From positions 62,001-126,000 of the IMG/VR virus record IMGVR_UViG_3300042340_000379: a DNA stretch of 64,000 nt; one strand, 5' to 3'. Shown here in pieces: positions 11,296-32,839 of the stretch. The number at the start of each line of letters is the position of its first letter. The first letter of the stretch is position 1. Position numbers and translations under genes: made by a program. The notes beneath the pieces are model-generated. The model was not told where the DNA came from, searched no databases, and saw only the letters and a list, made by a program, of their open reading frames with translations.

Positions 11296-11820
11296 ATGAT
11301 CCTATTCGGAATTGACCCTAGCCTAAGCTCAACTGGGTTAGCTATATTTGACACTGAAAAACTGACCCTTCAAATGGGTGCCCTACCTACCACGGACAAA
11401 AAGAAGTTTAACACCCAAGACAATTTTCAGCGCATGGCTTGGGTAGAAAGTATGATTGACACCTTAATCCTGTCCTATGAACCGAGCATGCTGTTCTTTG
11501 AAGAGCTAATGCAGCGCCCTCTTGGAATCCCTGGGATTAAGATAGACCTTCTTCTGAAGTACAATCTTCTCTACAAAAAATACAACATACCGTTTGAAAC
11601 TATTCCTTGTAGCCGAGATAAGTCATGGTTCAAAATCCTGGGCGCAAAAAGCACTAAGGATAAGTTTGCAGAAGTAATCCAACCCTACTGCAGTTTTACA
11701 ATTACAAAGAAAGATTATGACGCGACAGATGCGACAGGCGTTGTCTTAGCAGGCGCTAAGAATAAAAACTGCTTTGACGGCGACTTGTCTAAATTAACGT
11801 TTACCAAGGAAGTGTTTTAG
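11296..11820 (+). CDS. RuvC-like Holliday junction resolvase
   Basis: GIDPSLSSTGLA, FFEE, DATDA acidic motifs. Confidence 0.8.
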   Translation: MILFGIDPSLSSTGLAIFDTEKLTLQMGALPTTDKKKFNTQDNFQRMAWVESMIDTLILSYEPSMLFFEELMQRPLGIPGIKIDLLLKYNLLYKKYNIPFETIPCSRDKSWFKILGAKSTKDKFAEVIQPYCSFTITKKDYDATDATGVVLAGAKNKNCFDGDLSKLTFTKEVF

Positions 11821-12006
11821 ATGAAGCTACAAGTTCAACGGAAGTTTAACGAGGCGATAGAGATTATAGACCTCGATCTTGACCCTAACAGCAAAATACC
11901 AGTAGGGAACAGCTCGAAAAAAGCCCTCTATCTGAGTAGAGGCGAAGCTATCTACATCCCTGGACAGCAGGATGTAATCCCTTGGACAGTCAAAAAGATT
12001 GGCTAG
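11821..12006 (+). CDS. Hypothetical protein
   Basis: ATG directly after the previous stop. Confidence 0.5.
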   Translation: MKLQVQRKFNEAIEIIDLDLDPNSKIPVGNSSKKALYLSRGEAIYIPGQQDVIPWTVKKIG

Positions 12007-12068
12007 GTCGAACGGTTCCCATAACTTAAATTTTTGTAGCATACAAAAAAGCTATCCCCTAACTCCGC

Positions 12069-12770
12069 ATGTTAATTGAATCAAACGCTCAAACTTACCT
12101 TAAGAAATCTCCAGTTCAAGCCTCTGAGTTAGAACCCTCTCAACTCCACATACTGGAAAAGGGCACCCGACTTACAGTTAAGGCAATTGCTAAAAAAGAA
12201 ACCAGCGGGCACATATTCATTACACTAGACGGCCAATTCAAAGGATTCAATAGCTGGTACATCTACCCACCACACTGGATTAGTGATGAAGGCATTCATC
12301 CTAGCCATGAAGAACCTAAACTAATTCTCCCTGAAAATAAAGGGATTCTAATTGAGATCCCAGGATTAGGGGCTAGATATACAGGCAACCCGATTGATGG
12401 ATGCCCTAACTTTTTGTGGGGAGAAGCAACCGCTAACGGCACGCGCATTCCTGAAAGCCCTGCAATTGCAAACAATATTCTCAAATCAGCAAAAGTGCTA
12501 GAGAATATTCGCTCTGACTACAATGACCGACCTGTAAAAGTTAATAGCTGGTACAGAGATCCGGAGACTAACCGAAGGATAGGCGGGGCATCTCAATCAC
12601 AGCACCTTTCAGGTGGGGCAATCGATTTCAACATTGCTGGCATTAGTCCTTGGGATATTTACGCCCGGTATAACCCAACTTGGACTGGTGGCCTAGCTGC
12701 GGTAGACCGTGGCAGCTACCGTTTTTGTCACATTGATATTCGACCAATTAAATCCCGGTGGAGCTACTAA
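12069..12770 (+). CDS. Peptidase M15A (Zn peptidoglycan peptidase, endolysin candidate)
   Basis: SWYR...N..IGGA..SQH..G.AID and HID Zn ligands; cyanobacterial-type N-terminal domain (TYLKKSPVQASEL). Confidence 0.85.
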   Translation: MLIESNAQTYLKKSPVQASELEPSQLHILEKGTRLTVKAIAKKETSGHIFITLDGQFKGFNSWYIYPPHWISDEGIHPSHEEPKLILPENKGILIEIPGLGARYTGNPIDGCPNFLWGEATANGTRIPESPAIANNILKSAKVLENIRSDYNDRPVKVNSWYRDPETNRRIGGASQSQHLSGGAIDFNIAGISPWDIYARYNPTWTGGLAAVDRGSYRFCHIDIRPIKSRWSY

Positions 12771-12794
12771 GCTTCTGTTTTACCTAATCGACGG

Positions 12795-12837
12795 GAAGCC
12801 TACGCTTATTGGCTAGACAATCAAGCGTAGGTTTCTT
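12795..12837 (+). terminator. Long hairpin, terminator-like
   Basis: GAAGCCTACGCTT...AAGCGTAGGTTTC inverted repeat downstream of the M15 gene; weak T tail. Confidence 0.55.
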
Positions 12838-12922
12838 ACAAGCCACCTAAAAGAAAAATGCAATAAATCATTTACTTCTATAAAGAGGTAAGCTAGAGTA
12901 TAGACACTCTGGTCAATTTCTG

Positions 12923-14044
12923 ATGCAAAAAAGAGAATACCTCTCATTTTCAAGCCTGGAACTGTTTGGCAAATGTCAAACAGCGTATAAGCATAAATAT
13001 CTAGACGAGACCCAAGGGCATGAGACGATACAGCAGCCATTAATCCTTGGCTCTCTCATGCACGTTCTTCTAGAATACAGACTGCGGGATCTTCTCTCTA
13101 TTGATGATGCTCTCCAACTCTGTGCGGCGACTTGGGTAGAAAGCAACTGCGGTCTAAAAGTCGCGGATAGCGAAGAGAGGATGAACGCTGGAAAAGGCAT
13201 TTACCTGCCAGCCTTAATCAACTATGCCTGGGAAGTCTCTGGACTATTGCTTCGATGTGCCCCTAACTATAGAGGCAAAGACGCAATTAGAAATCAAGAT
13301 GGAACTCCCCCAAAAGATCCCATTGCATTTCCATCCAAAGCGTGGAAAGAAGCCTACTCAGAATTAGAAGTTTCGGAAGATAGGTACATGATCGATATCA
13401 TTGCCACCCAGTTAAACCCAGACTTCAAAGCGCTCTCTTTAGCTAACATTGCAGCATGGGCTGTAATGATGGCCCGCAACTTTAAGAAACCGAAGGAGGT
13501 GATGACCGTTGGTGTAGAAGATGAGTTCGGTAAAGAAAATCCTGTGTACACTGAAGGGTATTGGTGGAAAGGAGCAAAAGACTGGACAGCTGACCTACCT
13601 GAAGGTTTAGTCCCTGGAGTAGATGGGAAAGCTCGAGCGATCTTTGACCACAAGTCAGGGAAAAAAGAATTTGCAAAGGTTGCTATTCGTCAGCATCCTC
13701 AGTTAAATCTTTATGCTTGGCTTGAATACGAAACAACCGGACGACTACCTGATGTTATTGGCATCTCTCAGCCTTACTTTGGGCGACTTACCTATGAACC
13801 TGTAAATATCGACAATGTGTTTAGGGTAAAAGAATGGGTCACTAACCAAGCTAAAACTCTAAACGCCGCGATCGAGACAGAGACTTTCTCTCAACATCAC
13901 CCAAATGAATACAATAGCCCTTGTATTAATGGGGATTGGAAGACAGGATTAATCAATAGTAGCTGCCCTTACCTGGCTCATTGCTGGCCTGGCTATGCCG
14001 CCGACCTTTCTGAGTTTGAAGGCATTGAGATTCAAGCGCATTAA
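12923..14044 (+). CDS. PD-(D/E)XK RecB/Cas4-like exonuclease
   Basis: SFSSL...C, GSLMH..LE, IFDHKSG, QLNLYA, C-terminal C...CPY...C. Confidence 0.8.
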   Translation: MQKREYLSFSSLELFGKCQTAYKHKYLDETQGHETIQQPLILGSLMHVLLEYRLRDLLSIDDALQLCAATWVESNCGLKVADSEERMNAGKGIYLPALINYAWEVSGLLLRCAPNYRGKDAIRNQDGTPPKDPIAFPSKAWKEAYSELEVSEDRYMIDIIATQLNPDFKALSLANIAAWAVMMARNFKKPKEVMTVGVEDEFGKENPVYTEGYWWKGAKDWTADLPEGLVPGVDGKARAIFDHKSGKKEFAKVAIRQHPQLNLYAWLEYETTGRLPDVIGISQPYFGRLTYEPVNIDNVFRVKEWVTNQAKTLNAAIETETFSQHHPNEYNSPCINGDWKTGLINSSCPYLAHCWPGYAADLSEFEGIEIQAH

Positions 14045-14088
14045 AAACCCCAACTGTTCAGCTGATTGTTCTATACACATCAGCACAA

Positions 14089-14364
14089 ATGAATCACGAA
14101 TGGAATCAAAGCGGGCTTCTTCGCCTGCTCACGTTTAAGAAGCCAATCACCCGCGCCATGGCTAACGCCATTGTTCAGGAAGTATTTGACTTCATTGCAG
14201 TTGGATTAATTCTTGGTAGGGGCCCTGTGTCCTTACCGAGACTAGGTCAATTCACAATTGAGAATGGTGAAATCAAATTTAGCCCTTCAGCTCATCTTAC
14301 AAATTTAGTTCAAGCAGGCCACCGGAATCCTCGCTCACTAAAGGAATCCACTACCAATGGCTAA
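14089..14364 (+). CDS. HU/IHF-like DNA-binding protein
   Basis: A.AIV..VFD.I...L..G..VSLPRLGQF...IKFSPS..L pattern with a shortened arm. Confidence 0.65.
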   Translation: MNHEWNQSGLLRLLTFKKPITRAMANAIVQEVFDFIAVGLILGRGPVSLPRLGQFTIENGEIKFSPSAHLTNLVQAGHRNPRSLKESTTNG

Positions 14365-15265
14365 AGTTTGTACAGTACAAAAAAAGAAAACACCAAGCTA
14401 TGAAGTTCGGGATATTCAGTTTGCTGAGCCGCCATTAGCGCTGACAGAAGAGGAAGCTGAAAAGCAAGCAGCTAGGATCATTAAAGATTTTCTTGACCCG
14501 GTTAAAAGCAAAAAGTTAGATAGCCGGTGTAATCGACCTGATGCTATTCGAAAGGAGTTTCTTAAATACCTCCGCGCAGGCTTTGGGTATCAAGAAGACT
14601 TTAAGCACCCGATTTTAGACGAAACGTTCTCTAATCAGCTAGTCCATCAAAAGTTGTTTGAGCTAAAGAATCATTTCGCGCTCAAGGAAAGTAGTCAAAG
14701 CAGCCGACTGTCAAGTCACACAATAGCCAGGTCGTGTTCTTCTGCTGATGTGAGAAACGCTTTCTTAAACTACCTAAAGATTGAGTTTCCAACAGGTGCG
14801 GATTGGAGAAACCCTCTTACTAACAGGACGTACACTAGTATTGAGATTCGCACCACGCTCAAGCACTATCAAGAAGCGTATAACGGAATCAGCTCCTTAC
14901 ATTACAAGTCTCTGTGGTGTCTCTTTACAACCCAAGCCAGCCGAGCCTTCATCGCTAATAACTTTGGGTTTGAAGATAACTCAGTCCTTCGGCTTTGGCA
15001 TGACGCTGTTGATGGAGTCATAGTGCTTTTGGAATACAAAGACTTAAATCCAAATGAGGGGGGCAGCTATCATAAAGACTATCATGCACTCTGGTGTCTA
15101 ATCTCAACTCGAACCACGCGATCGCAGGCGTCAGAATACTTTAATCTGTCAGACTCTTCCATAAAACGACTGTGGAATGACCTGATTGACCCCGTGCTGC
15201 TAACCCTCGCCTACCCAGAATTAAGCATAGAGAAAGCGATGGGTATGTATAGAAATCGGGGTTGA
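14357..15265 (+). CDS. Putative transcription regulator with A-A-B-B internal duplication (B is HTH-like)
   Basis: Two copies of D.R..FL.YL...F....D...P....T and two copies of Y..LWCL..T...R......F...D.S..RLW.D..D.V...L.Y..L. Confidence 0.55.
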   Translation: MAKVCTVQKKKTPSYEVRDIQFAEPPLALTEEEAEKQAARIIKDFLDPVKSKKLDSRCNRPDAIRKEFLKYLRAGFGYQEDFKHPILDETFSNQLVHQKLFELKNHFALKESSQSSRLSSHTIARSCSSADVRNAFLNYLKIEFPTGADWRNPLTNRTYTSIEIRTTLKHYQEAYNGISSLHYKSLWCLFTTQASRAFIANNFGFEDNSVLRLWHDAVDGVIVLLEYKDLNPNEGGSYHKDYHALWCLISTRTTRSQASEYFNLSDSSIKRLWNDLIDPVLLTLAYPELSIEKAMGMYRNRG

Positions 15266-15334
15266 GCTACAATAACAATGAATCGTTACCTAAGCGGCGG
15301 GAGAACCTGTCGCTTTTTATATAGGACAAAAATT

Positions 15335-15580
15335 ATGTCAAGACATCCTTATACTTACTCAGCAGATTACATCGCCCATTTTGGGGGCTACGATAAGAAC
15401 GGAATTCAAATAAGCAGGTTCCAAGCGTCTCAAATCCGACAAGGAATTGCAAAAGCGCTTGGTATACCAGATGAAGAGCTAGCTGAAAAACTATCAACGT
15501 ATTACCAAGAAAATATGGATGAACTTTCTCAAGAAGCAGCAAAGCAGCTCTTAAAAGCAATTGGCCTAAATCTTAACTAG
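15335..15580 (+). CDS. Hypothetical phage protein
   Basis: ATG at 15335 follows an AGGA RBS (track start 15278). Confidence 0.65.
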   Translation: MSRHPYTYSADYIAHFGGYDKNGIQISRFQASQIRQGIAKALGIPDEELAEKLSTYYQENMDELSQEAAKQLLKAIGLNLN

Positions 15581-15655
15581 AAAACCCATGAGCGCTATCG
15601 CGGATCTAGAATGAGAGATAGCCGAATCTCTTTTTGTATGCCTATAGGAAAAACC

Positions 15656-15799
15656 ATGAAAGCATTCCACGGAACATCTGCAGACAATCTTGAAAGTATT
15701 TTAAAAATAGGTTTGCGCCCTGACAAAAAGCCAAACTGAACTACTTCTAAGGCTGAGTTGAGCACCAAAGCAAGCGTCTCCTTGGAGACAATAGCGTAG
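15656..15799 (+). pseudogene. Remnant of an ADP-ribosyltransferase-fold (HGT motif) gene
   Basis: AGGA RBS, then MKAFHGTSADNLESILKIGLRPDKKPN-TGA(15737)-TTSK...; truncated. Confidence 0.5.
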
Positions 15800-15814
15800 T
15801 AAGCTATTGAAAAC

Positions 15815-16513
15815 ATGGAAACAGAGAATCAAGCATTAGAGCATGCTTCTCAGGCGCTCGGCGTTCTAGAGCAGCTAGCTATAACTCACAGGGATATGGA
15901 AGATACTGTCCGAAGTATCCCTGCAACCTATAGAGTAAGCTTTGACCCAATCCTCGAGCGCTTCAAACTTCTAATCGAAGTGCTTGAGGAAGATGACGAG
16001 CTGGTGCCAGAGCTGGTTAAAGGCCGAAGACTCGGAGATGTCGCCAGCTCTAAAATCGAAAGGTTAAAGATTGGCAAACAAATTATACGGCTTAGAGAAG
16101 TTGAAGGTCAGACCTACCAACAGATTGCTGAGCGCATGAATATAGAGGCTACCACTGTCTCTAAGTTCTGCAAATTCTATGACAGTCAGAAGCCAGCCGT
16201 GCGCTCTCGCTATCAGCGCACGAGTATCTTTGATACAAGCCAGAATTTTGAAAATCTGGGTGCTATGATTTATAGATGCCTAGGAAACCTCGAAAACCTA
16301 GACCCTGAGAATCACGTCAAGTACATCTCAGAGTTAAGGCAGACCATCGGGGCCGCGCAGAAGTGGATGGAGCAAGTTAGCTCCCACCACAAGTATGACA
16401 TTCTCAAACAGGCGATCATAGACATTCTCTACGACGAGCTGCCTGAAAAGCGAGAAGCTATCATCAAGAGGTTCCAATCCGTTGGGGCCGCTCAAGTTCT
16501 CACGGGAAGTTAA
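15815..16513 (+). CDS. HTH DNA-binding protein (terminase small subunit is one possibility)
   Basis: GQTYQQIAERMNIEATTVSKF HTH followed by a helical C-terminus. Confidence 0.5.
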   Translation: METENQALEHASQALGVLEQLAITHRDMEDTVRSIPATYRVSFDPILERFKLLIEVLEEDDELVPELVKGRRLGDVASSKIERLKIGKQIIRLREVEGQTYQQIAERMNIEATTVSKFCKFYDSQKPAVRSRYQRTSIFDTSQNFENLGAMIYRCLGNLENLDPENHVKYISELRQTIGAAQKWMEQVSSHHKYDILKQAIIDILYDELPEKREAIIKRFQSVGAAQVLTGS

Positions 16514-16523
16514 TTCTATATAA

Positions 16524-18932
16524 ATGCAAACAGATAACATGAGCCAAGCTATACAAGTTCCATATATTTCTCAAAAAGATATCCAGGAAGCATCTGTAGT
16601 CCATGAATTCCCAAAGTTTGGCCCTTTAGGCAGTGTTGTTGACTTGCGTACTTATCGACGTTGGTCAGATACAGACAACCGCCGCGAGAGTTTCTGGGAA
16701 CGGAATGCTCGCGTAGCTAACTATAATGCATCTCTTGCGTCAAAGCTCGATCGTCATGTAGAGCAAGATGCTAGAAAAGTATTTGATTTTATGAATCAAT
16801 TTCTAGCCTTTCCAAGTGGAAGAACAATGTGGGTTGGTGGAACAAAAGTCTCAGATGCCCACCCAGCTGCAAATTTCAATTGCAGTGCCCTCGCAATTAA
16901 CCGACTAGGTGCGTTTACAACCCTGTTTGAACTTCTTATGTTAGGAACAGGAGTCGGTTATAGAGTATTCTCTTCTGACATTAGCCAACTACCCAGCATA
17001 AAAGGGTACCCTAATTTGGTTCTTGAGGATTACGCTCCACTTAAAAAATCGAGCCGACAGCAAGAAACAACACAGCACCAAAACTCAGAAGAAGAAACAA
17101 TTTATGTGACTGTAGGGGACTCAAGGCGAGGCTGGATTCAGTCTGTTGAAATTCTACTCAATGTCTGGTTTGGAATTGATGAGAGTACAGAAAGGCCCAT
17201 TAAAAGAATCTCATTTAACCTAAATTCAATCAGACCCATGGGCGAGAGAATCCAAGGTTTTGGAGGAACTGCTTCCGGCCCAGAAGCTCTTGGAACTATT
17301 CTTACAAATATCCAAGATATTCTAAAAGAGTGCCCAACAAATAGACTCCGCAGTATTGACTGCATGGACATCTGTGACTGCATTGCTAAAGGCGTAGTTG
17401 CCGGTTCCTCACGGCGGTCAGCTCTGATCTGCCTATTTGAAGAAGGAGATGATTTGTGCGCCCACGCAAAACGGGGCCTATATAGCAATCCTGAAATGCA
17501 GAAGAAGCTGTATAGAAATCAATCTAATAACACAGAATGTGTTGGTAGTTCAAGGCTTCCAGCTTTTAGAGAGTTTCTAGAAAACAATCCTGACGCAGAC
17601 TGGTTCGATATAAAAAGTTTTATTGGGAAGCATCGCCCATCTATTGAATGGCTCAAAGATAGATTTGAAGTTGTAAAAGCAGAAGGAGAGCCTGGCTTTA
17701 ACAGCATTCTTATGATGGCAGCTAAGCGTTGGAAAGCAGTTAGAGAACACAGACCTGATTGCCCCGTAGAAGAAATCTGGGTTCGCTACTGTAATGTAGT
17801 CACAAACCCATGTCATGAGATTGTTTTATCAGCAGGGTACAGTGAAAAATTAGAGGACTGCGGAAAAGGAGTCTCCTTCTGTAACCTAACAACAATCCCT
17901 CTTCAAAATTACGTTGTAGATAAAAAGCTTCAAAAAGATCTTCTTAAAGAAGCAATCGAACTATGTGTTCGTATAGGGTTACGGCAAACCTGTGTCACCA
18001 TGCCAACTCAAGAACTCAACGAAACTCAAGCAGAAGAAAGGCTACTTGGAGTTAGCGCAACTGGCTGGAGAATGATGTTTGACCTCCTTGGCTGGACAAC
18101 AACATCAGGGGAAGTCAAAGATCTTCAAGCAGATATGAGAGCTTGGGCAAATAATGAAGCTACTCGGTATGCTTTAGAGTTGGGTGTTCCCAGGCCTCTG
18201 CTTGTCACATGTATTAAACCTGAAGGAACGTCTTCAAAAGTATTTGGCTCTACTGATGGTCTCCACTGGGATTGGGCAGAATACTATATTCGGCGCATTC
18301 AAATGTCTACAACTGATGCGTTAGCAAAAACTCTTAAAGCCCAGGGTTTCCCATGGAATCCTAAAGACTACGACATCAATTACCTAATTAAGCCTGAGAG
18401 TAAGCTAAACACTTGGCAAAAGATCGAAGTATTCAATGCGCTTTCTAACAAAGAAAAAGATGACATTTTTGAGCAATCAATGGCAGTTACATTTGATTTT
18501 CCGATTAAGTCACCAGCAAAGATAGCAAGTAGTTCTGTTTCTGCTATTGAGCAGCTAGAGAACATGCTCTCATTCTCAACTTGGTACACTGACCACATGC
18601 CATCCTCAACTATAACGGTGAAGGCTAATGAGTGGGATGGTGTAGCTAACTGGATTCACAACAATTGGACAGAGTACACGACCACGTCCATGTTCTCATA
18701 CTATAACGAGGCTCATCCTCTTCTACCGTATGAAGACATTACCAAGGAAGAGTACTACCAAATGCTGACTCAATTCAAGGAGAAATACAAACACCAATTC
18801 TCTGATGGACGAGTAACCTTTATGGTAGACGAAACACTGTTAGCCCAGAAAGAATACGAGGATGTTCTTAAAGGGCTAGACATTGATGAGTTATTAGATG
18901 CTGGGTGCTCTGTTGGATGTCCCATTCGATAA
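16524..18932 (+). CDS. nrdJ: Class II adenosylcobalamin-dependent ribonucleotide reductase (RTPR-like)
   Basis: FNCS, TNPCHEI, FCNL, KPEGTSS and C-terminal redox pair CSVGCPIR; no beta-subunit gene adjacent. Confidence 0.9.
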   Translation: MQTDNMSQAIQVPYISQKDIQEASVVHEFPKFGPLGSVVDLRTYRRWSDTDNRRESFWERNARVANYNASLASKLDRHVEQDARKVFDFMNQFLAFPSGRTMWVGGTKVSDAHPAANFNCSALAINRLGAFTTLFELLMLGTGVGYRVFSSDISQLPSIKGYPNLVLEDYAPLKKSSRQQETTQHQNSEEETIYVTVGDSRRGWIQSVEILLNVWFGIDESTERPIKRISFNLNSIRPMGERIQGFGGTASGPEALGTILTNIQDILKECPTNRLRSIDCMDICDCIAKGVVAGSSRRSALICLFEEGDDLCAHAKRGLYSNPEMQKKLYRNQSNNTECVGSSRLPAFREFLENNPDADWFDIKSFIGKHRPSIEWLKDRFEVVKAEGEPGFNSILMMAAKRWKAVREHRPDCPVEEIWVRYCNVVTNPCHEIVLSAGYSEKLEDCGKGVSFCNLTTIPLQNYVVDKKLQKDLLKEAIELCVRIGLRQTCVTMPTQELNETQAEERLLGVSATGWRMMFDLLGWTTTSGEVKDLQADMRAWANNEATRYALELGVPRPLLVTCIKPEGTSSKVFGSTDGLHWDWAEYYIRRIQMSTTDALAKTLKAQGFPWNPKDYDINYLIKPESKLNTWQKIEVFNALSNKEKDDIFEQSMAVTFDFPIKSPAKIASSSVSAIEQLENMLSFSTWYTDHMPSSTITVKANEWDGVANWIHNNWTEYTTTSMFSYYNEAHPLLPYEDITKEEYYQMLTQFKEKYKHQFSDGRVTFMVDETLLAQKEYEDVLKGLDIDELLDAGCSVGCPIR

Positions 18933-19189
18933 AAGCTAGTTACACAAACTGGGAAGGAAGAACGTCTAAGCGAACTTTCCTTCCCATCCTTTTCTACTGG
19001 GGAGCTACAAAATGGCACCCCAGTTTTCAACTTCTCATAGTGGCCTACGACTATGAGAAAAAATCCGTCCGAACATTTGCCCTAAGAGACTTTCATGGAA
19101 TTAAGAGAATCAACCCCGCGTATCACATCAGGCTACTGCGAAGGATCTGGAAAGAAAAAGCCAGGTTACTCAGAAATTCTAAAGGGTGA
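18917..19189 (+). CDS. Stand-alone WYL-like domain protein
   Basis: YTNWEG..SKR...P...YWG.TKWHP..Q.L..AYD.EK..VRTFAL.D pattern. Confidence 0.6.
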   Translation: MSHSIKASYTNWEGRTSKRTFLPILFYWGATKWHPSFQLLIVAYDYEKKSVRTFALRDFHGIKRINPAYHIRLLRRIWKEKARLLRNSKG

Positions 19190-19796
19190 GCAGCTTCCTA
19201 AATCCGACCCAGCTTGCAAGCTTCAGTCTCTCGGCTGGAAAGTCGCAATCCTTTCTGCCCGCTGTGTGGCTGAGATGCCAATACCAGATGCAGAAGCTAG
19301 TCACTTTCTAACTTGGATTAACAGCAACTTCTTCTCGCTAGGAGCATACGCTTTTAATAAAGGGAATACAGACCATAGAGTATTTCCCACTAACTGCGTA
19401 CAGCAACTGGAAGCCGAAGTTCAAAGAATGAAAACCTTCATTACTCGTGAGACAGGCCGAGCAGCAACAGACTTCATTAGACTCAAATCTTCTTATGGTC
19501 TTCTTGTAGAAGAAACCCAGCTAACCGTTAGGGAAACAGAGGCAGAGTTTGTAAGCTGGATGTACGACATCCGAATCGTGTCAGATTTTTACAGTCATCT
19601 AGATAAAGATAGTGAAAGCGCGTTTGTTCGCTACAAACGAATGCGAACCCTTGGTGACTTTCTAAACAGGCTGTCTACCTACCTGTTCTGGATGAATCAG
19701 TATCACGCTCTTCTATTTCAAATAGCTGAAGGACTTCCATTTGAGTACGCTGAGTGGAAATCGAATATTGAAGTCGGCCTTTTATTTCCTGAATAA
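19095..19796 (+). CDS. PduO/MMAB-type cob(I)alamin adenosyltransferase-like protein
   Basis: G.SEIL.GEQLPKSDP, TVRETE and FLNRLSTYLF match PduO motifs (G..V.K.D.R; V.RRAER; YLNRLSD.LF); next to nrdJ. Confidence 0.7.
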   Translation: MELRESTPRITSGYCEGSGKKKPGYSEILKGEQLPKSDPACKLQSLGWKVAILSARCVAEMPIPDAEASHFLTWINSNFFSLGAYAFNKGNTDHRVFPTNCVQQLEAEVQRMKTFITRETGRAATDFIRLKSSYGLLVEETQLTVRETEAEFVSWMYDIRIVSDFYSHLDKDSESAFVRYKRMRTLGDFLNRLSTYLFWMNQYHALLFQIAEGLPFEYAEWKSNIEVGLLFPE

Positions 19797-19799
19797 CCT

Positions 19800-20015
19800 A
19801 TGCATTCACTAGAAATTGATATCTATGATGATGGTATTGACATCGGTTTTGCTGGATACAGCACTGCCTGTGTACCTGAATCAGCAGTTGTGTATATTGA
19901 AATGCGCAATGGCATCCCTTTTGTTTTGATATGGGCTGACATTAATCAAGAAGATCCAACTCATACTATCTCTCTTGAAAATGCTAAAGAGAGCATGCGA
20001 AAAAAGAAAGACTAA
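19800..20015 (+). CDS. Hypothetical phage protein
   Basis: Compact ORF with WADINQEDPTH motif. Confidence 0.6.
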   Translation: MHSLEIDIYDDGIDIGFAGYSTACVPESAVVYIEMRNGIPFVLIWADINQEDPTHTISLENAKESMRKKKD

Positions 20016-20039
20016 CTTCTAGTTGCCCACTTAACCCCC

Positions 20040-20071
20040 AAACCTCCACACTAGAATTAGCGTGGGGGTTT
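20040..20071 (+). promoter_or_regulatory. Inverted repeat enclosing a -10-like TAGAAT
   Basis: AAACCTCCAC-ACTAGAATTAGC-GTGGGGGTTT, 6 nt before the GGDEF/EAL start codon. Confidence 0.4.
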
Positions 20072-20077
20072 AACTAT

Positions 20078-21697
20078 ATGCCAGACACATCTTGGGACGC
20101 TATCTTCAACGCGACTCATACCATTCTTATTTCAGAATCAGGGAGAATCACCAAAAGCTCTCAAGGATTCGCTAATCTTCTAGGCTACACTCAATCAGCC
20201 TTAGAAGAAATGAACTATCGCAACATTGTCCATCTTGCTGATCGCGATCAAGATGAAGCTTTGTTTAAGGATCTTTTTAACGGAAACCAAACTCATTTTA
20301 ATTCCGAAGAGCGCTACATCCATAAAGAGGGATATACCATTTGGGTTCATATCATTAGCACTCTCTATGTTGAAGATGGGGCTAGGTTTATTGTAACTGT
20401 CCATGACATCACTACTCAAAAAGAGAAAGAGCTGTGTGTAGAACATTTATCTACACACGATGGTTTAACAAATCTCTACAACCGAGCCTTTTTCACAGAA
20501 TCCCTAAAGCAGACAATTGTAAAATGCTCGCGCTATTCTTGTGAAGACTATCTGTTCTACCTAGATATCAACACGTTTAAGCAAATTAATGACGACTATG
20601 GCCAAGAGGTCGGTGACCTCTGCTTAAAAATTATTGCCTCTAGGTTAACAAGTATATTTAGAAATACAGATGAAATCTTTAGAGTGAGCGGCGATGAGTT
20701 TGCCATCATTGTTCATAACGTCCAGAGTGAAGAAGCGCTTACGTACCTAATCTCAAGAATACAAAAAGAGCTTGATAAACCCATTCTCTCTGTAGCCAAC
20801 AACTTAACTGTTTCAATAACTCTGTCTCTCAGTCTGGGTGTGTGCAAACTAACTCATATATCCTCTCCATCAGATGCTCTCGCCATTGTTCAAAGATCTC
20901 TTCAGAAATCTAAAGCTGCGGAAGGGCAAACTATAGAGTGGGCATCATCTAAAGAAATCTATGAAGAGATAGAACTTGAACGGGAGATCCGTCAAGCAAT
21001 CCTCAAAGAAGACTTTGTTGTTTATTATCAGCCAATCAGAAATCTAAGTGACATGTCTCTCGCGGGGCATGAAGCGCTGCTCAGATGGCCTAAGAAAAAC
21101 ATATCCCCGATTACTATCTTAGAGATAGCCGAAAAGCTCAATCTAGTAGAACAACTTGAATGGAACTTATTTAAAAAGATTTTGAAGGTTGCTTCTTCTG
21201 AAGGGCTAGCCAAAAGATGGATTTCTGTTAATCTAAATTCACTGCTGCACGCTAAAAACTTTCGGGCAGAACTTACCCAACTTCTAAAAGACTACGATGT
21301 AAATCGAGACAGTATTGCGTTCGAGGTTATTGAAACTATCCGGCATAGCGACCCGGTTGTGCGCCTTTTAATAGACATTCAAAATGACGGCCACTCTCTT
21401 AAGCTAGATGACTTTGCACGCGATTATGCCTCGTTTGTATGGTTAAAGACACTCCCTCTAGATAGCGTAAAAATTGACCGTGAGTTTATCCACGGTATTG
21501 CTAAGGATAAACACAAAAAGCTGCAAGCTATCACCAGCGCTATGATTGATGTCTGCCACTCTCTTGGAATAAAGGTTGTCGCGGAAGGAATTCAAAGAGC
21601 TGATGATCTTGAGTGGCTAAAGCTAGCGGGCTGCGATCAAGGGCAGGGATTTCACCCATCTTTAGGAATACCTAGTAAAGATTTGCAGAAAAGATAG
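20078..21697 (+). CDS. PAS-GGDEF-EAL c-di-GMP cyclase/phosphodiesterase
   Basis: PAS (HKEG..IWV...HDIT), D.LT.LYNR, FKQIND.YG..GD, RNTD I-site, SGDEF, YQPI, EALLRW, DDF, KID, AEG. Confidence 0.92.
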   Translation: MPDTSWDAIFNATHTILISESGRITKSSQGFANLLGYTQSALEEMNYRNIVHLADRDQDEALFKDLFNGNQTHFNSEERYIHKEGYTIWVHIISTLYVEDGARFIVTVHDITTQKEKELCVEHLSTHDGLTNLYNRAFFTESLKQTIVKCSRYSCEDYLFYLDINTFKQINDDYGQEVGDLCLKIIASRLTSIFRNTDEIFRVSGDEFAIIVHNVQSEEALTYLISRIQKELDKPILSVANNLTVSITLSLSLGVCKLTHISSPSDALAIVQRSLQKSKAAEGQTIEWASSKEIYEEIELEREIRQAILKEDFVVYYQPIRNLSDMSLAGHEALLRWPKKNISPITILEIAEKLNLVEQLEWNLFKKILKVASSEGLAKRWISVNLNSLLHAKNFRAELTQLLKDYDVNRDSIAFEVIETIRHSDPVVRLLIDIQNDGHSLKLDDFARDYASFVWLKTLPLDSVKIDREFIHGIAKDKHKKLQAITSAMIDVCHSLGIKVVAEGIQRADDLEWLKLAGCDQGQGFHPSLGIPSKDLQKR

Positions 21698-21734
21698 AAG
21701 CTGTTAGTATAAAAGTAATTAATAGCTTGAGTTT

Positions 21735-22115
21735 ATGGTTGCTCTTAGAAATGCTCCTCCTTTCCGCCAGTCGTCTACACCACGTCCTGCCTACAAAACA
21801 TACTCCCCAACGGCTCGCCTCCAACCTCGGCAGATGGCCCCAAGGAAACAGCAAAACTTGCTGATTTATTCCCTTGTCTGGGGATTTGCTTTTTACCTAG
21901 TGACATCCACCGCATATAGCCTAGCTCTTGGCAAACTCGAGCCTATCTACTTTATGGGATTGATAGCCGTGGCGCTAATTATGGTAATCAACGCATTTGG
22001 GGAGCAGCTTGGCTTGTCGTTATGGTTTAGAATATTAGCTAGCTTCGCGATGGGCTGGCTGATTCCGACCTTTATGAGCGGGCTTTACTTTTTTCAAAAC
22101 CACATCGCGATGTAA
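21735..22115 (+). CDS. Three-TM membrane protein
   Basis: Basic N-terminus and three hydrophobic helices. Confidence 0.6.
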   Translation: MVALRNAPPFRQSSTPRPAYKTYSPTARLQPRQMAPRKQQNLLIYSLVWGFAFYLVTSTAYSLALGKLEPIYFMGLIAVALIMVINAFGEQLGLSLWFRILASFAMGWLIPTFMSGLYFFQNHIAM

Positions 22116-22143
22116 TCCTGTTAACTTTGTATAGTACAAAAAC

Positions 22144-23037
22144 ATGACCCGACCCTTAGATCAAATCGTGGCCGCTGTTCAGGCCGAGCAGTCGATCACC
22201 TGGCACGAATTCTGTCTCGCCGCTAACCGCACCGCCAGCAAAGAGAAATTCCCTTCTGGGTATCCCGCTGACCTTGCTGTCAGCGTTATGGGGCAGTTTA
22301 CCTATATTGGCCAAGAGCTAGATAAACTCAAAAAGGCATTGTTCTATGGAAAGAGTATGCCAGAACTTGTCGCAGCGCATCGCGTAACTATTGGAGAATC
22401 AGACCAGTACTCAGGCGAAGACTGGCCTGATAATATCTCACCTGACATTATTCACTGGATTTTGGGTGAGGCCACTGAGTCTGTTGAGCTAGTTGAAGCA
22501 CTAATCAAAGGGATGGTTGATGGTGAATCCCTTGATGCCATCAATCTTATGGAAGAAGAGGGTGACGGGCACTGGTACCGCGCTCTTCCTTACATTCACG
22601 CATTGGAAACAAAAGGCTTTGACCCAGAAGAACGCAAACAGCTAGTCTGGCGCAAAGTTCTCCTCAAGCTCATCACTCGCTACGGCGATAAGTTTAGCGC
22701 TACCGCTGCAATCGAACGGAATACTAACCTAGAGCGCGAAGTTCTAGAGGCGGGCATTGTTATGCCTAACGGAGAAATCAATTCCGCGATCGAGCAGCAA
22801 ATCATTCTCACCTCAGAACCTGATTTGGAAACTGCCCGCCAGGCACTCTCCGCTCTAGCTCGAGCAGAGCAGCAACTGCAAGACGCTCACACTGAGATCC
22901 TGACAGAAGCCGAGCAATACCTAAACATACTTTTGCTTCAGCATGTACTTCCCAGCACGATCGCTGAAATGGAAATGCCAGTTTTAATAAAGCAGCAAGT
23001 ACTAAAAATGGTACAAGCAGCCTCGACTACAAACTAA
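22144..23037 (+). CDS. MazG-like all-alpha NTP pyrophosphohydrolase with C-terminal extension
   Basis: KKALFYGK, GEATESVELVE, EEEGDGHWY, KL..RYGDKFS. Confidence 0.7.
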   Translation: MTRPLDQIVAAVQAEQSITWHEFCLAANRTASKEKFPSGYPADLAVSVMGQFTYIGQELDKLKKALFYGKSMPELVAAHRVTIGESDQYSGEDWPDNISPDIIHWILGEATESVELVEALIKGMVDGESLDAINLMEEEGDGHWYRALPYIHALETKGFDPEERKQLVWRKVLLKLITRYGDKFSATAAIERNTNLEREVLEAGIVMPNGEINSAIEQQIILTSEPDLETARQALSALARAEQQLQDAHTEILTEAEQYLNILLLQHVLPSTIAEMEMPVLIKQQVLKMVQAASTTN

Positions 23038-23102
23038 TTCGGGTAATAAGCTAAAATGGGCCTAGCTAGTAAACTAGGCCTTTGCCGTATCTGGAGATAA
23101 AA

Positions 23103-23309
23103 ATGTCAGATCAATCACAACCCGTACAACTCTCTTTGGAACAACAGTTTAGTCTGCGATCGTTTGAAGCTCAAGTTAACCGCATGAATCTTGAGCAGGC
23201 CCAGCAGTTTCTAGTCATGCTCTACGAGCAGATGATGTACAGAGAAAATACGTATAAGTCCTTAATCAAATCAGATCTACTAGGCATAAGCCGACCAATG
23301 TACCCATGA
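23103..23309 (+). CDS. nblA: Phycobilisome degradation protein NblA
   Basis: LSLEQQFSLRSFEAQVNRMNLEQAQQFLVMLYEQMMYREN.YK.L; GGAG RBS before ATG 23103. Confidence 0.95.
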   Translation: MSDQSQPVQLSLEQQFSLRSFEAQVNRMNLEQAQQFLVMLYEQMMYRENTYKSLIKSDLLGISRPMYP

Positions 23310-23548
23310 AACAAACAGGCACATTACTTAAAGACAAAGGAATCTTATTTCTTGTTACGGAAGAAGGCAAGTTCAAGATCAACTCTATGGACGCGCCCAA
23401 GTTTGAAAGATATCCTGACGGAACGCCAATGGAAGGAAATATCAGGAACGATTATCCTCCTGACCAACTAGTCAAACTTAAATGGGACTATCAGGGCACC
23501 GTGCATCCAAGCCACATTCGAGTCATCAAACAAGCCGTCGCTCAATAA
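23306..23548 (+). CDS. Hypothetical protein
   Basis: ATGA-coupled to nblA. Confidence 0.6.
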   Translation: MKQTGTLLKDKGILFLVTEEGKFKINSMDAPKFERYPDGTPMEGNIRNDYPPDQLVKLKWDYQGTVHPSHIRVIKQAVAQ

Positions 23549-23554
23549 GCTATC

Positions 23555-23752
23555 ATGACGTTAAAAGTCAAATGAGTTCGTTCAAGCGCAAACGGAACTC
23601 TAATTCCCTACTATCAGGAAAAAGTTGGTGACTTATGGTCAAAATATACCAGCCACCCTCAACGTAAACCAGACATTCCCGGCCACTCCCTAGGAATGGA
23701 AACGTTTAAACATTTGTTAAGTCTTGGGGCCGAGGTAGTTAAAGATGGCTAG
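23555..23752 (+). pseudogene. Small gene with an in-frame TGA at codon 7
   Basis: MTLKVK*VRSSANGTLIPYYQEKVGDLWSKYTSHPQRKPDIPGHSLGMETFKHLLSLGAEVVKDG; fills the gap and overlaps the next ATG by 8 nt. Confidence 0.55.
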
Positions 23753-23945
23753 ATCTAAAACAATTCGCCCGGTTGGATTTAAGCTGACCTTTCACGCGGG
23801 CCAGTGGTACGGCTTCAACTGGAAGGGCGGATTGTTTGTCGGCCTTGTTGGTATTTCATTAACAAGAGAAAATGCTCTATCAAAATCTAAGAGTAGCCTC
23901 CGCCGTTCTAACAACGATGGGCTTTGCTTTCGGCCTAAGCGATAG
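23745..23945 (+). CDS. Hypothetical protein
   Basis: Short ORF; overlap with the next ORF lowers certainty. Confidence 0.4.
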   Translation: MARSKTIRPVGFKLTFHAGQWYGFNWKGGLFVGLVGISLTRENALSKSKSSLRRSNNDGLCFRPKR

Positions 23946-24126
23946 AATTAGCGCTTATAATCAAAGTCGAGACCCGGTAGAGTTCTCGTTAATATTCATC
24001 GCGCTCGCTTTCGCTGTGAACATTTCGATTAACTATCCTTGGGAACGATTTCAATCTACTTATAAACTCATTACACAATTATGTCTGACAAAGAAACTCG
24101 ATACGAACATTCGTCCTACGGATTAA
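23872..24126 (+). CDS. Small membrane protein
   Basis: Two hydrophobic segments. Confidence 0.45.
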   Translation: MLYQNLRVASAVLTTMGFAFGLSDRISAYNQSRDPVEFSLIFIALAFAVNISINYPWERFQSTYKLITQLCLTKKLDTNIRPTD

Positions 24127-32692: not shown

Positions 32693-32696
32693 TCAA

Positions 32697-32769
32697 GCCG
32701 TGTTAGCTCAGTTGGTAGAGCAGTTGGCCTGTACCCAACGTGTCGCGGGTTCGAGCCCTGCATACGGCT
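32697..32769 (+). tRNA. tRNA-Thr(UGU), no encoded CCA
   Basis: Full cloverleaf: GCCGTGT/ATACGGC, GCTC/GAGC, GTTGG-CCTGTAC-CCAAC, GCGGG-TTCGAGC-CCTGC. Confidence 0.9.
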
Positions 32770-32839
32770 TTAACAATCAATAAGAAAATATGAATATCAC
32801 AATACGGCACTGCCTGCGATCTGTAGAAGAAAGAATCAT

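What the first reader, a model, noticed from the sequence alone, without database searches (positions are those of the whole stretch)
16524..19796. B12 module: class II RNR coupled to a PduO-type adenosyltransferase
Seen: nrdJ is followed, via overlapping genes, by a divergent PduO/MMAB-like gene. Known: NrdJ needs an adenosylated cobamide, and cyanobacteria typically make pseudocobalamin. Inference: the phage makes or repairs its own light-sensitive cofactor, diverting cobamide from methionine synthase. The ATP-binding N-terminus is atypical (ITSGYCEGSGKKKPG).
Basis: partly seen in the sequence, partly recalled or inferred. Interest (0 to 1): 0.6.

Follow-up and report, generated by a model that had tools for sequence, protein, structure and literature searches.

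The report
Cyanophage NrdJ with its own adenosyltransferase
A freshwater cyanobacterial virus carries a vitamin-B12-dependent enzyme for making DNA building blocks, followed directly by a diverged copy of the enzyme that makes the active B12 cofactor; this pairing recurs in cyanobacterial viruses and suggests they secure their own cofactor supply.

Summary
Window 16524-18932 encodes a monomeric class II ribonucleotide reductase (RTPR-type NrdJ). Window 19095-19796 encodes a 233-aa protein with a genuine PduO-type ATP:corrinoid adenosyltransferase (ATR) fold: AF2 pLDDT 92, VIA-align Z 17-18 to solved PduO/MMAB enzymes. The overlapping gene between them (18917-19189) is an intact small phage WYL-domain protein, and close relatives lack it.

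The ATR belongs to a small family of 64 clusters among 1.8 billion proteins. In the phage isolate collection it occurs only in cyanophages (Nodularia, Microcoleus). It usually sits beside NrdJ, even where the NrdJ lineage has been exchanged.

All 53 aligned members keep the equivalents of human ATR K78, F170, R190, E193 and N214. The window's clade has lost the GD of the ATP motif (now KK). It has also lost the D90-R186 salt bridge (now W48/Q142).

The best reading is a working, specialised adenosyltransferase that supplies or regenerates adenosyl-cobamide for the phage NrdJ. Diversion of cobamide from methionine synthase and repair of light damage remain untested. Nodularia phage records already annotate such a gene next to RNR, so this is a new variant of a known kind. 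No activity was measured.

The parts
16524..18932 (+). nrdJ: monomeric class II (adenosylcobalamin-dependent) ribonucleotide reductase of RTPR type, 802 aa, without an intein. It has the thiyl-radical motif N428-P-C430-H-E432, C120 aligned to RTPR C119, and a C-terminal Cys pair C795/C799.
   Evidence: No class I small subunit and no second RTPR candidate was seen in the 208-kb genome.
18917..19189 (+). Small WYL-domain protein gene (90 aa from ATG 18917; 94 aa from GTG 18905). The WYL core is about nt 18917-19102. The basic 28-aa tail is encoded inside the 5' end of the ATR gene.
   Evidence: phrog_3715 scores 1.3e-16, and Pfam WYL scores 19.1 bits (below its gathering score). tblastn hits 108 phage records, including 70-75 aa stand-alone genes. 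17 invariant residues are kept. Atlas features score 0.93 to viral WYL clusters. The gene is absent from relatives L001/L002/L006. It is present in an independent lake-metagenome strain.
19095..19796 (+). PduO-type ATP:corrinoid adenosyltransferase homologue, 233 aa, of a phage-specific subfamily. Compared with canonical PduO it has extra segments (about residues 12-17, 93-101 and 162-188) and a C-terminal tail with an invariant W221.
19122..19172 (+). Atypical N-terminal ATP-binding segment, residues 10-26 (ITSGYCEGSGKKKPGYS). The canonical T-(K/R)-x-G-D-x-G-x-(T/S) motif is changed. K21-K22 replace G63-D64 of human ATR. G24 (=G66) and S26 (=S68) are kept.
   Evidence: Residue map from hmmalign plus the PDB profile alignment. 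Family table. This part of the AF2 model has low pLDDT (56-57), as expected for a segment that orders only with ATP (PMC8633584).
19200..19202 (+). K36, equivalent to human ATR K78 (beta-hairpin roof, triphosphate contact). Invariant in 53 of 53 family members.
   Evidence: PMC8633584.
19473..19475 (+). F127, equivalent to human F170 and LrPduO F112. In the solved enzymes this Phe sits under the cobalt and holds the corrinoid base-off. Invariant in 53 of 53.
   Evidence: PMC8633584.
19518..19541 (+). Catalytic helix. Q142 sits in place of human R186 (LrPduO R128). R146 = R190 and E149 = E193, both invariant. A150 sits in place of R194.
19662..19676 (+). L190-N191-R192-L193-S194, the LNRLS motif. 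N191 = N214 (Mg/triphosphate contact) and S194 = S217.
19236..19238 (+). W48, in place of human D90 (LrPduO D35). Its salt-bridge partner position is Q142. The rest of the family has E/D here paired with R.

Best explanation
The locus is a two-enzyme B12 module of a 208-kb freshwater cyanophage, with an unrelated small WYL gene inserted between the two enzymes. NrdJ (RTPR type) reduces ribonucleotides using adenosyl-cobamide as its radical source. The downstream 233-aa protein is a functional but specialised PduO-type adenosyltransferase.

Inferred mechanism:
- The protein assembles like other PduO enzymes.
- It binds ATP through K36, R146, E149, N191 and S194 and the G24-x-S26 hairpin. K21/K22 may take over the triphosphate contact of the lost G-D.
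- It holds cob(II)amide base-off over F127.
- After reduction by a host flavin or flavodoxin-type donor, it transfers the 5'-deoxyadenosyl group from ATP to cobalt.
- The product feeds the phage NrdJ. It either tops up the adenosylated pool when NrdJ is made in bulk, or re-adenosylates cob(II)amide left by abortive turnover or photolysis.

PduO enzymes bind the corrinoid base-off, so the host's pseudocobalamin should be accepted. In the human enzyme, R186Q speeds release of AdoCbl into solution, so the natural Gln at this position may favour product release, which would suit an RNR that takes its cofactor from solution.

Shown here: gene order, fold, residue conservation, recurrent linkage, and restriction to cyanophages among isolates. 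Inferred: oligomer, activity, substrate, reductant, and hand-over to NrdJ.
For: Fold: AF2 pLDDT 92. Foldseek TM 0.75-0.81 to PduO ATRs. VIA-align Z 17.8 to B. cereus PduO with ATP (180 of 182 residues aligned) and Z 17.4 to human ATR. The model's beta-hairpin at residues 25-35 matches the ATP-induced hairpin 68-80 of the human enzyme (PMC8633584).

Homology: 45 of 53 family members hit PF01923, best 7.7e-17. The family profile hits MMAB at 8.9e-12.

Active site: equivalents of K78, F170, R190, E193 and N214 are invariant in 53 of 53. G66 is kept in 51, S68 in 49 (plus 3 Thr) and S217 in 52. PMC8633584 names these same residues as the ATP, Mg and cobalt-face residues.

Linkage: NrdJ lies directly upstream in the window and in L001/L002, L003, L006/L016 and L009/L010. 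One ORF intervenes in Nodularia phages, 2-4 kb in L011 and G153, and the two share a genome in G154.

Linkage survives partner exchange. The L001/L006 ATRs are 58-60% identical to the window's, but their NrdJs only 25-29%. The L009 ATR is 35% identical, but its NrdJ 51-54%.

Specificity: 1207 phage records carry an NrdJ homologue, yet the ATR family is found in only 10, all cyanophages.

Genome content: no other B12-binding domain, CobA/CobO or CobS_N is found in the phage genome, so NrdJ is the only recognisable client.

Host side: the Nodosilinea MAG carrying a relative has CobA-type ATRs and its own RTPR but no canonical PduO. 122 of 151 genomes sampled from the cyanobacterial phylum lack PduO.

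Other: the two substitutions in the ATR of an independent strain are synonymous. No + strand terminator lies between nrdJ and the ATR.
Against: - No activity was measured.
- The single-sequence Pfam score is marginal (25.7 against 24). NCBIfam and PHROGs give nothing for this protein.
- The window's clade lacks three features of studied PduO enzymes: the G-D of the ATP motif, the D90-R186 salt bridge and R194. In humans, R186Q and R186W cause disease (PMC9262797).
- No phage-encoded corrinoid reductase was identified.
- The host already has CobA-type adenosyltransferases, so the phage enzyme could be redundant.
- Linkage is not universal. The partial Microcoleus phage record and two 35-kb provirus fragments have the ATR without an RTPR in the sequenced part. 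In G154 the two genes lie 54 kb apart.
Confidence: 0.62

Rival explanations
1. The protein is a cofactor escort rather than a catalyst. It keeps the PduO fold and the corrinoid/adenosine pocket but has lost efficient adenosyl transfer. It acts as a chaperone that binds Ado-cobamide or cob(II)amide and loads or unloads the phage NrdJ, as human ATR does for methylmalonyl-CoA mutase.
For: The window's clade has lost G-D, the salt-bridge pair and R194. Human ATR has separable catalytic and chaperone functions (PMC8633584). The family-specific insertions and the invariant C-terminal W221 could form a docking surface.
Against: The residues that contact ATP's ribose, alpha-phosphate, adenine and Mg/triphosphate (R146, E149, K36, N191, S194) are invariant. 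A pure binder would hardly need them. Loss of G-D is shared by a 25-member clade that otherwise evolves conservatively. Basic residues replace the Gly in 21 of the roughly 28 GD-less members, which looks like compensation.
Confidence: 0.15
2. The protein is an adenosyltransferase that serves the host cobamide pool in general, or another host enzyme, and not NrdJ specifically. On this reading the adjacency only reflects the clustering of nucleotide-metabolism and auxiliary genes in phage genomes.
For: Family members also sit next to dUTPase, ThyX and dNMP kinase genes. In G154 the ATR and NrdJ are 54 kb apart, and three records have the ATR without an RTPR.
Against: Immediate adjacency holds in at least six independent lineages and persists after the NrdJ lineage was exchanged. 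Every complete genome examined that has the family also has NrdJ: G000, G153, G154 and the Nodularia phages. No other B12-dependent enzyme is encoded by the phage.
Confidence: 0.1
3. The protein has a PduO fold put to another use. It would use a different nucleotide donor or a non-corrinoid acceptor, or act as a regulator, with no role in B12 metabolism.
For: The ATP motif is rewritten. Two extra Cys residues are conserved in the near clade: C15, and C41 (kept in 40 of 53 family-wide). Sequence identity to solved ATRs is 14-18%.
Against: The Phe that sits under the cobalt and the adenine- and ribose-binding Glu and Arg are invariant. The genomic partner is an adenosylcobalamin enzyme. Basal family members have a fully canonical G-D, Glu-Arg pair and LNRLS motif.
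Confidence: 0.06

Closest known systems
PduO-type ATP:cob(I)alamin adenosyltransferases (Pfam PF01923; human MMAB 2IDX/6D5X, Lactobacillus reuteri PduO 3CI1, B. cereus 3KE5)
   Same: Same helical-bundle fold with an N-terminal hairpin (Z 17-18). Same ATP, Mg and cobalt-face residues: K78, F170, R190, E193, N214, S217, G66 and S68 equivalents. Same LNRLS motif.
   Different: About 40 residues longer, with three insertions and a C-terminal tail carrying an invariant Trp. In the window's clade G-D has become K-K, D90 has become W, R186 has become Q and R194 has become A. Only 14-18% identical. Encoded by a virus next to an RNR rather than a mutase or dehydratase.
'Cobalamin adenosyltransferase' of Nodularia phages vB_NpeS-2AV2 (2AV2_172) and vB_NspS-kac65/kac68 (UniProt A0A482MHX5)
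   Same: Same phage-specific subfamily (26% identity, E 9e-16 pairwise; best BFVD fold match at 5e-9). Same position downstream of a class II RNR with one small ORF in between. Cyanophage host.
   Different: The Nodularia proteins keep the canonical G-D and the Glu-Arg pair and are basal in the tree. Their RNR carries an intein. Their intervening 93-aa ORF is unrelated to the window's WYL gene. They are about 140-kb siphoviruses, whereas this is a 208-kb genome.
Lactobacillus leichmannii ribonucleoside-triphosphate reductase (RTPR, 1L1L; TIGR02505)
   Same: Monomeric class II architecture with the insertion domain, the NPCxE thiyl loop, C119 equivalent and a C-terminal Cys pair.
   Different: Scores 320 bits, under the 340-bit equivalog cut-off. 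Much less RTPR-like than the host-type NrdJ of a related phage or provirus (608 bits) or of the Nodosilinea MAG (750 bits).
Human MMAB-MMUT cofactor delivery and repair system
   Same: An adenosyltransferase functionally paired with one adenosylcobalamin-dependent radical enzyme that is prone to cofactor inactivation.
   Different: No G-protein chaperone (MMAA/MeaB) is found here. The client is an RNR that binds its cofactor reversibly. Direct transfer is not shown.
Small stand-alone WYL-domain proteins of phages (phrog_3715; e.g. Bacillus phage Shanette gp135, Salmonella phage SeKF_80 CDS0109)
   Same: The intervening ORF shares 38-46% identity and all 17 invariant core residues. These genes also lie in replication and nucleotide-metabolism regions.
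   Different: It has a 28-aa basic tail made by reading into the ATR gene. Function is unknown in every case.

Membership tests
PduO-type corrinoid adenosyltransferase (PF01923) | Significant match to the family profile | tested here: met
   PF01923 scores 25.7 bits against a gathering score of 24, E 1.4e-5, covering 9-169 of 171. 45 of 53 relatives match, best 7.7e-17. The family profile against PDB ATRs reaches 8.9e-12. The match is marginal for the single sequence.
PduO-type corrinoid adenosyltransferase (PF01923) | Helical-bundle fold with an N-terminal beta-hairpin roof | tested here: met
   AF2 pLDDT 92. Foldseek TM 0.75-0.81. VIA-align Z 14.4-17.8 for the first 41 rows, all in this family, then a drop to 10.7.
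PduO-type corrinoid adenosyltransferase (PF01923) | N-terminal ATP motif T-(K/R)-x-G-D-x-G-x-(T/S) | tested here: not met
   G63-D64 equivalents are K21-K22. G66 and S68 equivalents (G24, S26) are kept. About half the family (24-26 of 53) keeps G-D. The loss is derived.
PduO-type corrinoid adenosyltransferase (PF01923) | ATP/Mg ligands K78, R190, E193, N214, S217 (human numbering) | tested here: met
   K36, R146, E149, N191 and S194 are present. They are invariant or nearly invariant in the family. Their roles are taken from PMC8633584. The R194 equivalent is Ala.
PduO-type corrinoid adenosyltransferase (PF01923) | Phe under the cobalt (human F170, LrPduO F112) that enforces base-off four-coordinate cob(II)alamin | tested here: met
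   F127 is invariant in 53 of 53.
PduO-type corrinoid adenosyltransferase (PF01923) | Inter-subunit salt bridge D90-R186 (LrPduO D35-R128) | tested here: not met
   W48 and Q142 occupy these positions in the window and its six nearest relatives. The acidic partner (E/D) is kept in 43 of 53 members and the Arg in 44 of 53.
PduO-type corrinoid adenosyltransferase (PF01923) | Homotrimer with active sites at subunit interfaces | tested here: inconclusive
   No usable result was obtained (see Tried and rejected).
PduO-type corrinoid adenosyltransferase (PF01923) | ATP-dependent adenosylation of cob(I)alamin | not testable with these tools
   Needs an anaerobic enzyme assay.
Monomeric class II RNR (RTPR, TIGR02505) | Profile match over the curated cut-off | tested here: not met
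   320 bits against a 340.05 cut-off, E 2.7e-95, covering 6-690 of 724. It is a clear homologue but not an equivalog by NCBI's threshold.
Monomeric class II RNR (RTPR, TIGR02505) | Class II insertion domain, thiyl-radical Cys loop, redox Cys and C-terminal Cys pair | tested here: met
   PF21995 at 1.1e-13. NPC430HE motif, C120 aligned to RTPR C119, and C795/C799.
WYL domain (PF13280), small phage form (phrog_3715) | Profile match and conserved core | tested here: met
   phrog_3715 at 1.3e-16. 17 invariant residues are shared with 70-154 aa phage homologues. Pfam WYL scores 19.1 bits, below its gathering score of 21.8.

The most novel reading that the evidence does not exclude
The GD-less, salt-bridge-less clade that holds the window's protein is not a conventional adenosyltransferase. 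It would be a virus-evolved, NrdJ-dedicated cofactor loading and repair factor. For example, it might re-adenosylate cob(II)amide directly on or next to the reductase, or use a different triphosphate-binding chemistry (Lys-Lys in place of Gly-Asp and the metal contact). On this reading, cyanophage DNA synthesis would be independent of the host's adenosylation capacity in the light.
Probability: 0.2. Interest if true: 0.75.

Novelty: new variant of a known kind. Interest (0 to 1): 0.55.

Why it matters
Viruses with B12-dependent RNR are usually treated as fully dependent on the host for the active cofactor (for example PMC10547690). This is a conserved viral module that pairs the reductase with the last step of coenzyme B12 synthesis. 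Among isolated phages, only cyanophages have it.

If the enzyme is active, adenosyl-cobamide supply, and not only the corrin ring, limits phage DNA synthesis in cyanobacteria. That adds a cofactor-activation step to the list of viral auxiliary metabolic functions.

The family also offers a natural series of active-site variants: G-D kept or lost, and the salt bridge kept or lost, including a natural counterpart of the pathogenic human R186Q. These variants could inform PduO/MMAB enzymology and help explain how product release and retention are tuned.

Tried and rejected
- blastn of the locus against 50,697 phage records gave no match.
- A single-sequence phmmer search and the 6-sequence profile against PDB gave only noise and a weak MMAB hit (E 0.69). 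The homology became clear only with the 53-sequence profile.
- A homotrimer job (three copies plus ATP) returned no verdict, with scores of 0.11 and 0.02 against a mark of 0.42. It is not used as evidence either way.
- The search for related loci failed on alignments A2, A5 and A7 because no stretch was conserved enough. The IMG/VR survey is therefore small: L006 and L021-L025.
- The 93-aa ORF between RnR and ATR in Nodularia phage 2AV2 is not homologous to the window's WYL ORF. A conserved three-gene module is therefore rejected.
- I considered a frameshift fusion of NrdJ to WYL or of WYL to ATR and rejected it. No slippery heptamer lies in 18900-18935. The ATR N-terminus from M1/R9 is conserved in relatives that lack the WYL gene.
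- No cobalamin riboswitch or other Rfam family lies in 12000-24000.
- No CobS_N, CobA/CobO, B12-binding domain or class I R2 is found in the phage genome.
- The canonical PduO loci of cyanobacterial-phylum genomes (L017-L020) show no NrdJ within their 1.5-kb flanks.
- Literature searches for phage or cyanophage adenosyltransferase found no paper that discusses this module. The library covers only open-access papers, and the original Nodularia phage paper was not readable there.


Full report
**Observation.** The window is bases 62001-126000 of a single 207,855-bp contig. This is an IMG/VR virus record estimated 97% complete, with 45% GC. Between 16524 and 19796 there are three + strand ORFs:
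- an 802-aa ORF at 16524-18932;
- a small ORF in a different frame at 18905(GTG)/18917(ATG)-19189;
- a 233-aa ORF at 19095-19796.

The small ORF overlaps the end of the first ORF by 16-28 nt and the start of the third by 95 nt.

**The reductase.** The 802-aa protein is a monomeric class II RNR. It matches phrog_367 at 8e-131 and TIGR02505 (RTPR) at 320 bits, E 2.7e-95, just under the 340-bit equivalog cut-off. Pfam finds RNR-II_ins_dom, RNR_Alpha and the barrel domain. Its only PDB sequence match is L. leichmannii RTPR 1L1L at 1e-46. It has the NPC430HE thiyl loop, C120 aligned to RTPR C119, and a C-terminal C795/C799 pair. Several relatives carry an intein, but this protein does not. No class I small subunit is found in the genome.

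**The PduO-like protein: homology and fold.** Alone it scores 25.7 bits against PF01923 (gathering score 24) and nothing in NCBIfam or PHROGs. The word search found five relatives. Because that left the protein open, I spent the exhaustive profile search. It found only 64 clusters at E<1e-3 among 1.84 billion representatives.

A 53-sequence alignment (A2) settles the homology:
- 45 of 53 members hit PF01923, best 7.7e-17.
- The profile hits human MMAB at 8.9e-12, LrPduO at 2.6e-10 and other solved ATRs.
- AlphaFold2 on A2 gives pLDDT 92 and pTM 0.86.
- The best Foldseek matches down to rank 43 are all PduO-type ATRs or scaffolds built on them (TM by target 0.75-0.81 for the best).
- VIA-align gives Z 17.8 to B. 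cereus PduO with ATP (180 of 182 residues aligned) and 17.4 to human ATR. The first 41 rows are all in this family, then Z drops to 10.7.

**Active site.** I mapped the protein onto human ATR through the profile alignment and hmmalign. The numbering offsets reproduce the known residues R186, R190, E193, F170, N214 and S217. For LrPduO they reproduce D35, F112, R128 and R132, which agrees with the titles of the variant structures. PMC8633584 gives the roles:
- K78, S217, N214, G63 and S68 contact the triphosphate directly or through Mg/K.
- R190 contacts the ribose and the alpha-phosphate.
- E193 and R194 contact the adenine.
- F170 lies 3.6 Å from the cobalt in the base-off cofactor.
- Residues 68-80 form an ATP-induced hairpin.

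Conservation in the family is as follows. K36 (=K78), F127 (=F170), R146 (=R190), E149 (=E193) and N191 (=N214) are invariant in 53 of 53. G24 (=G66) is kept in 51, S26 (=S68) in 49 plus 3 Thr, and S194 (=S217) in 52. The model's hairpin at 25-35 is in register with human 68-80. This pattern is what purifying selection on an ATP- and corrinoid-binding site would leave.

**What is atypical.** The window's protein has K21-K22 where canonical enzymes have G63-D64. It has W48 for D90 (LrPduO D35), Q142 for R186 (LrPduO R128) and A150 for R194.

A tree was rooted on four canonical PduOs taken from cyanobacterial-phylum genomes. It shows that:
- GD-bearing, Glu-Arg-bearing members, including the Nodularia-phage type, are basal.
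- One derived clade of 25 (SH-aLRT 98) lost G-D, mostly to Lys or Arg at the Gly position.
- A nested clade of 8 (SH-aLRT 99) holds the window, and 7 of its members also replaced the salt-bridge pair with Trp plus Gln or Asn.

The divergence is therefore stepwise and inherited, not decay of a single gene. From my own knowledge of LrPduO enzymology, the D35-R128 bridge matters for catalysis. In the human enzyme R186Q and R186W are pathogenic (PMC9262797), and R186Q accelerates release of AdoCbl into solution (PMC8633584).

Compared with canonical PduO, the whole family has insertions at about residues 12-17, 93-101 and 162-188, and a C-terminal tail with an invariant W221.

**Linkage with NrdJ.** The gene lies at these distances from an NrdJ gene:
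- Directly downstream in the window, L001/L002 (two Logan runs), L003 (ENA), L006/L016 (IMG/VR and a Nodosilinea MAG contig) and L009/L010 (JGI).
- One small ORF away in five Nodularia phages.
- 2.2 kb away in L011 and about 4 kb away in G153, a complete 121-kb genome.
- 54 kb away in G154, a complete 252-kb genome.

Exceptions are a partial Microcoleus phage record, two provirus fragments about 52% complete, and short contigs.

The two partners have discordant histories. The ATRs of L001 and L006 are 58-60% identical to the window's, but their NrdJs only 25-29%. The ATR of L009 is 35% identical, but its NrdJ 51-54%. The adjacency has therefore survived exchange of the reductase, which argues for selection on the pairing itself.

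**Who has it.** With either a derived or a basal family member as query, tblastn against 50,697 phage records finds the family in 10 records only: nine Nodularia and one Microcoleus. By contrast, 1207 records hold an NrdJ homologue, mostly actinobacteriophages. A canonical PduO query finds 15 records, mostly short unannotated fragments. In BFVD, only three viral proteins share the fold at E<1e-3, and the best is the Nodularia phage protein.

The window's phage encodes NblA at 23103-23309, as does relative L001. It is found in lake-water metagenomes of several studies. In one independent strain the nrdJ end, the WYL gene and the ATR are 99.5% identical, and both ATR changes are synonymous.

**Host side.** The Nodosilinea MAG that carries a 58%-identical relative has four CobA/CobO-type matches and its own RTPR (750 bits). 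No canonical PduO match was found in it. In a sample of 151 genomes of that phylum, 29 have a canonical PduO and 122 do not. The S. elongatus control has CobA and RTPR but not PduO. The phage genome has no CobS_N, CobA/CobO or B12-binding domain. NrdJ is therefore the only recognisable B12 client, and the ATR is the only B12-related accessory.

**The gene in between.** The small ORF is a real gene. It matches phrog_3715 at 1.3e-16, hits 108 phage records by tblastn, keeps all 17 invariant residues of 70-154 aa phage WYL proteins, and matches viral WYL clusters in the Atlas at 0.93. It is missing from the closest relatives, where nrdJ and the ATR are separated by 46-82 nt. The ORF at the same place in Nodularia phages is unrelated to it. 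It is therefore an insertion peculiar to this lineage. Its 28-aa basic tail arises because it reads into the ATR gene. It is not part of the conserved module.

**Mechanism and rivals.** The best-supported reading (0.62) is a working PduO-type adenosyltransferase that supplies or regenerates adenosyl-cobamide for the phage NrdJ.
- Shown: fold, ligand residues, linkage and distribution.
- Inferred: oligomer, activity, use of pseudocobalamin (plausible because PduO enzymes bind the corrinoid base-off), the reductant, and hand-over to NrdJ.

The Lys-Lys replacement may contact the triphosphate directly, and Gln142 may favour product release. Both are hypotheses.

The rivals are:
- a non-catalytic escort (0.15);
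- an ATR that serves the host pool without specific coupling to NrdJ (0.10);
- a PduO fold used for something else (0.06).

**Novelty.** A phage 'cobalamin adenosyltransferase' next to RnR is already annotated in Nodularia phage records and in UniProt. I found no paper in the searchable library that discusses it. The new points are:
- the delineation of a small phage-specific PduO subfamily;
- its recurrent pairing with NrdJ despite partner exchange;
- its restriction to cyanophages among isolates;
- the derived active-site variant carried by this window.

I rate it a new variant of a known kind, of moderate interest.

Noticed in passing
window 23103-23309 (+): NblA (phycobilisome degradation protein) homologue of 68 aa, PF04485 at 80 bits. 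It marks the virus as a cyanophage. It is also present in relative L001 at 11787-11981.
   Followed up: partly
window 20078-21697 (+): A phage-encoded PAS-GGDEF-EAL protein (539 aa), a candidate c-di-GMP turnover enzyme. It is conserved at 45% identity directly after the ATR in L001/L002.
   Followed up: partly
window 15815-16513 (+): A 232-aa protein with a sigma-70 region 4-like helix-turn-helix lies directly upstream of nrdJ. It is 70% identical, and in the same position, in L001/L002. It may regulate the module.
   Followed up: no
window 22144-23037 (+) and 12923-14044 (+): A MazG-like pyrophosphatase (phrog_229) and a PD-(D/E)XK exonuclease-like protein flank the region. The neighbourhood is a nucleotide-metabolism and replication block.
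   Followed up: no
window 19800-20015 (+): A 71-aa ORF without any family match follows the ATR. In an independent lake strain the sequence identity breaks at 19814/19815, right after the ATR stop, which suggests a recombination junction.
   Followed up: partly
L001 4476-7919; L004 1891-5340; L009 2-3277; L011 94-2748: The NrdJ genes of several relatives carry inteins (with LAGLIDADG in L001/L002). The window's NrdJ is intein-free.
   Followed up: partly
window 40287-53492 (-); genome C1:156772-166854 (+): Giant ORFs of 4401 aa and 3360 aa in the phage genome.
   Followed up: no
window 32696-32770 (+): tRNA-Thr (anticodon TGT), the only tRNA in the window.
   Followed up: no
L007 1-2436: In this 7.7-kb metagenome contig the ATR homologue has no intact NrdJ upstream. 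There is only a weak match to the NrdJ C-terminal part (residues 667-750) at 2053-2319, and no genes are called in the first 2 kb. This may be a broken or differently organised reductase.
   Followed up: no
genomes G002...G089: In the sample of 151 genomes from the cyanobacterial phylum, canonical PduO occurs in every third handle up to G089 (29 genomes) and in none of the others. One subgroup of the phylum apparently has it throughout, and the rest lack it.
   Followed up: no
L016 (Nodosilinea sp. WJT8-NPBG4 MAG, contig of 255 kb) and IMG/VR UViG_3300035001_000008: The same relative of the module appears in a cyanobacterial MAG contig and in an IMG/VR record classed as a provirus. Its NrdJ is host-like (608 bits to RTPR). 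This may indicate an integrated or co-binned jumbo cyanophage, and a filamentous cyanobacterial host range for the group.
   Followed up: partly
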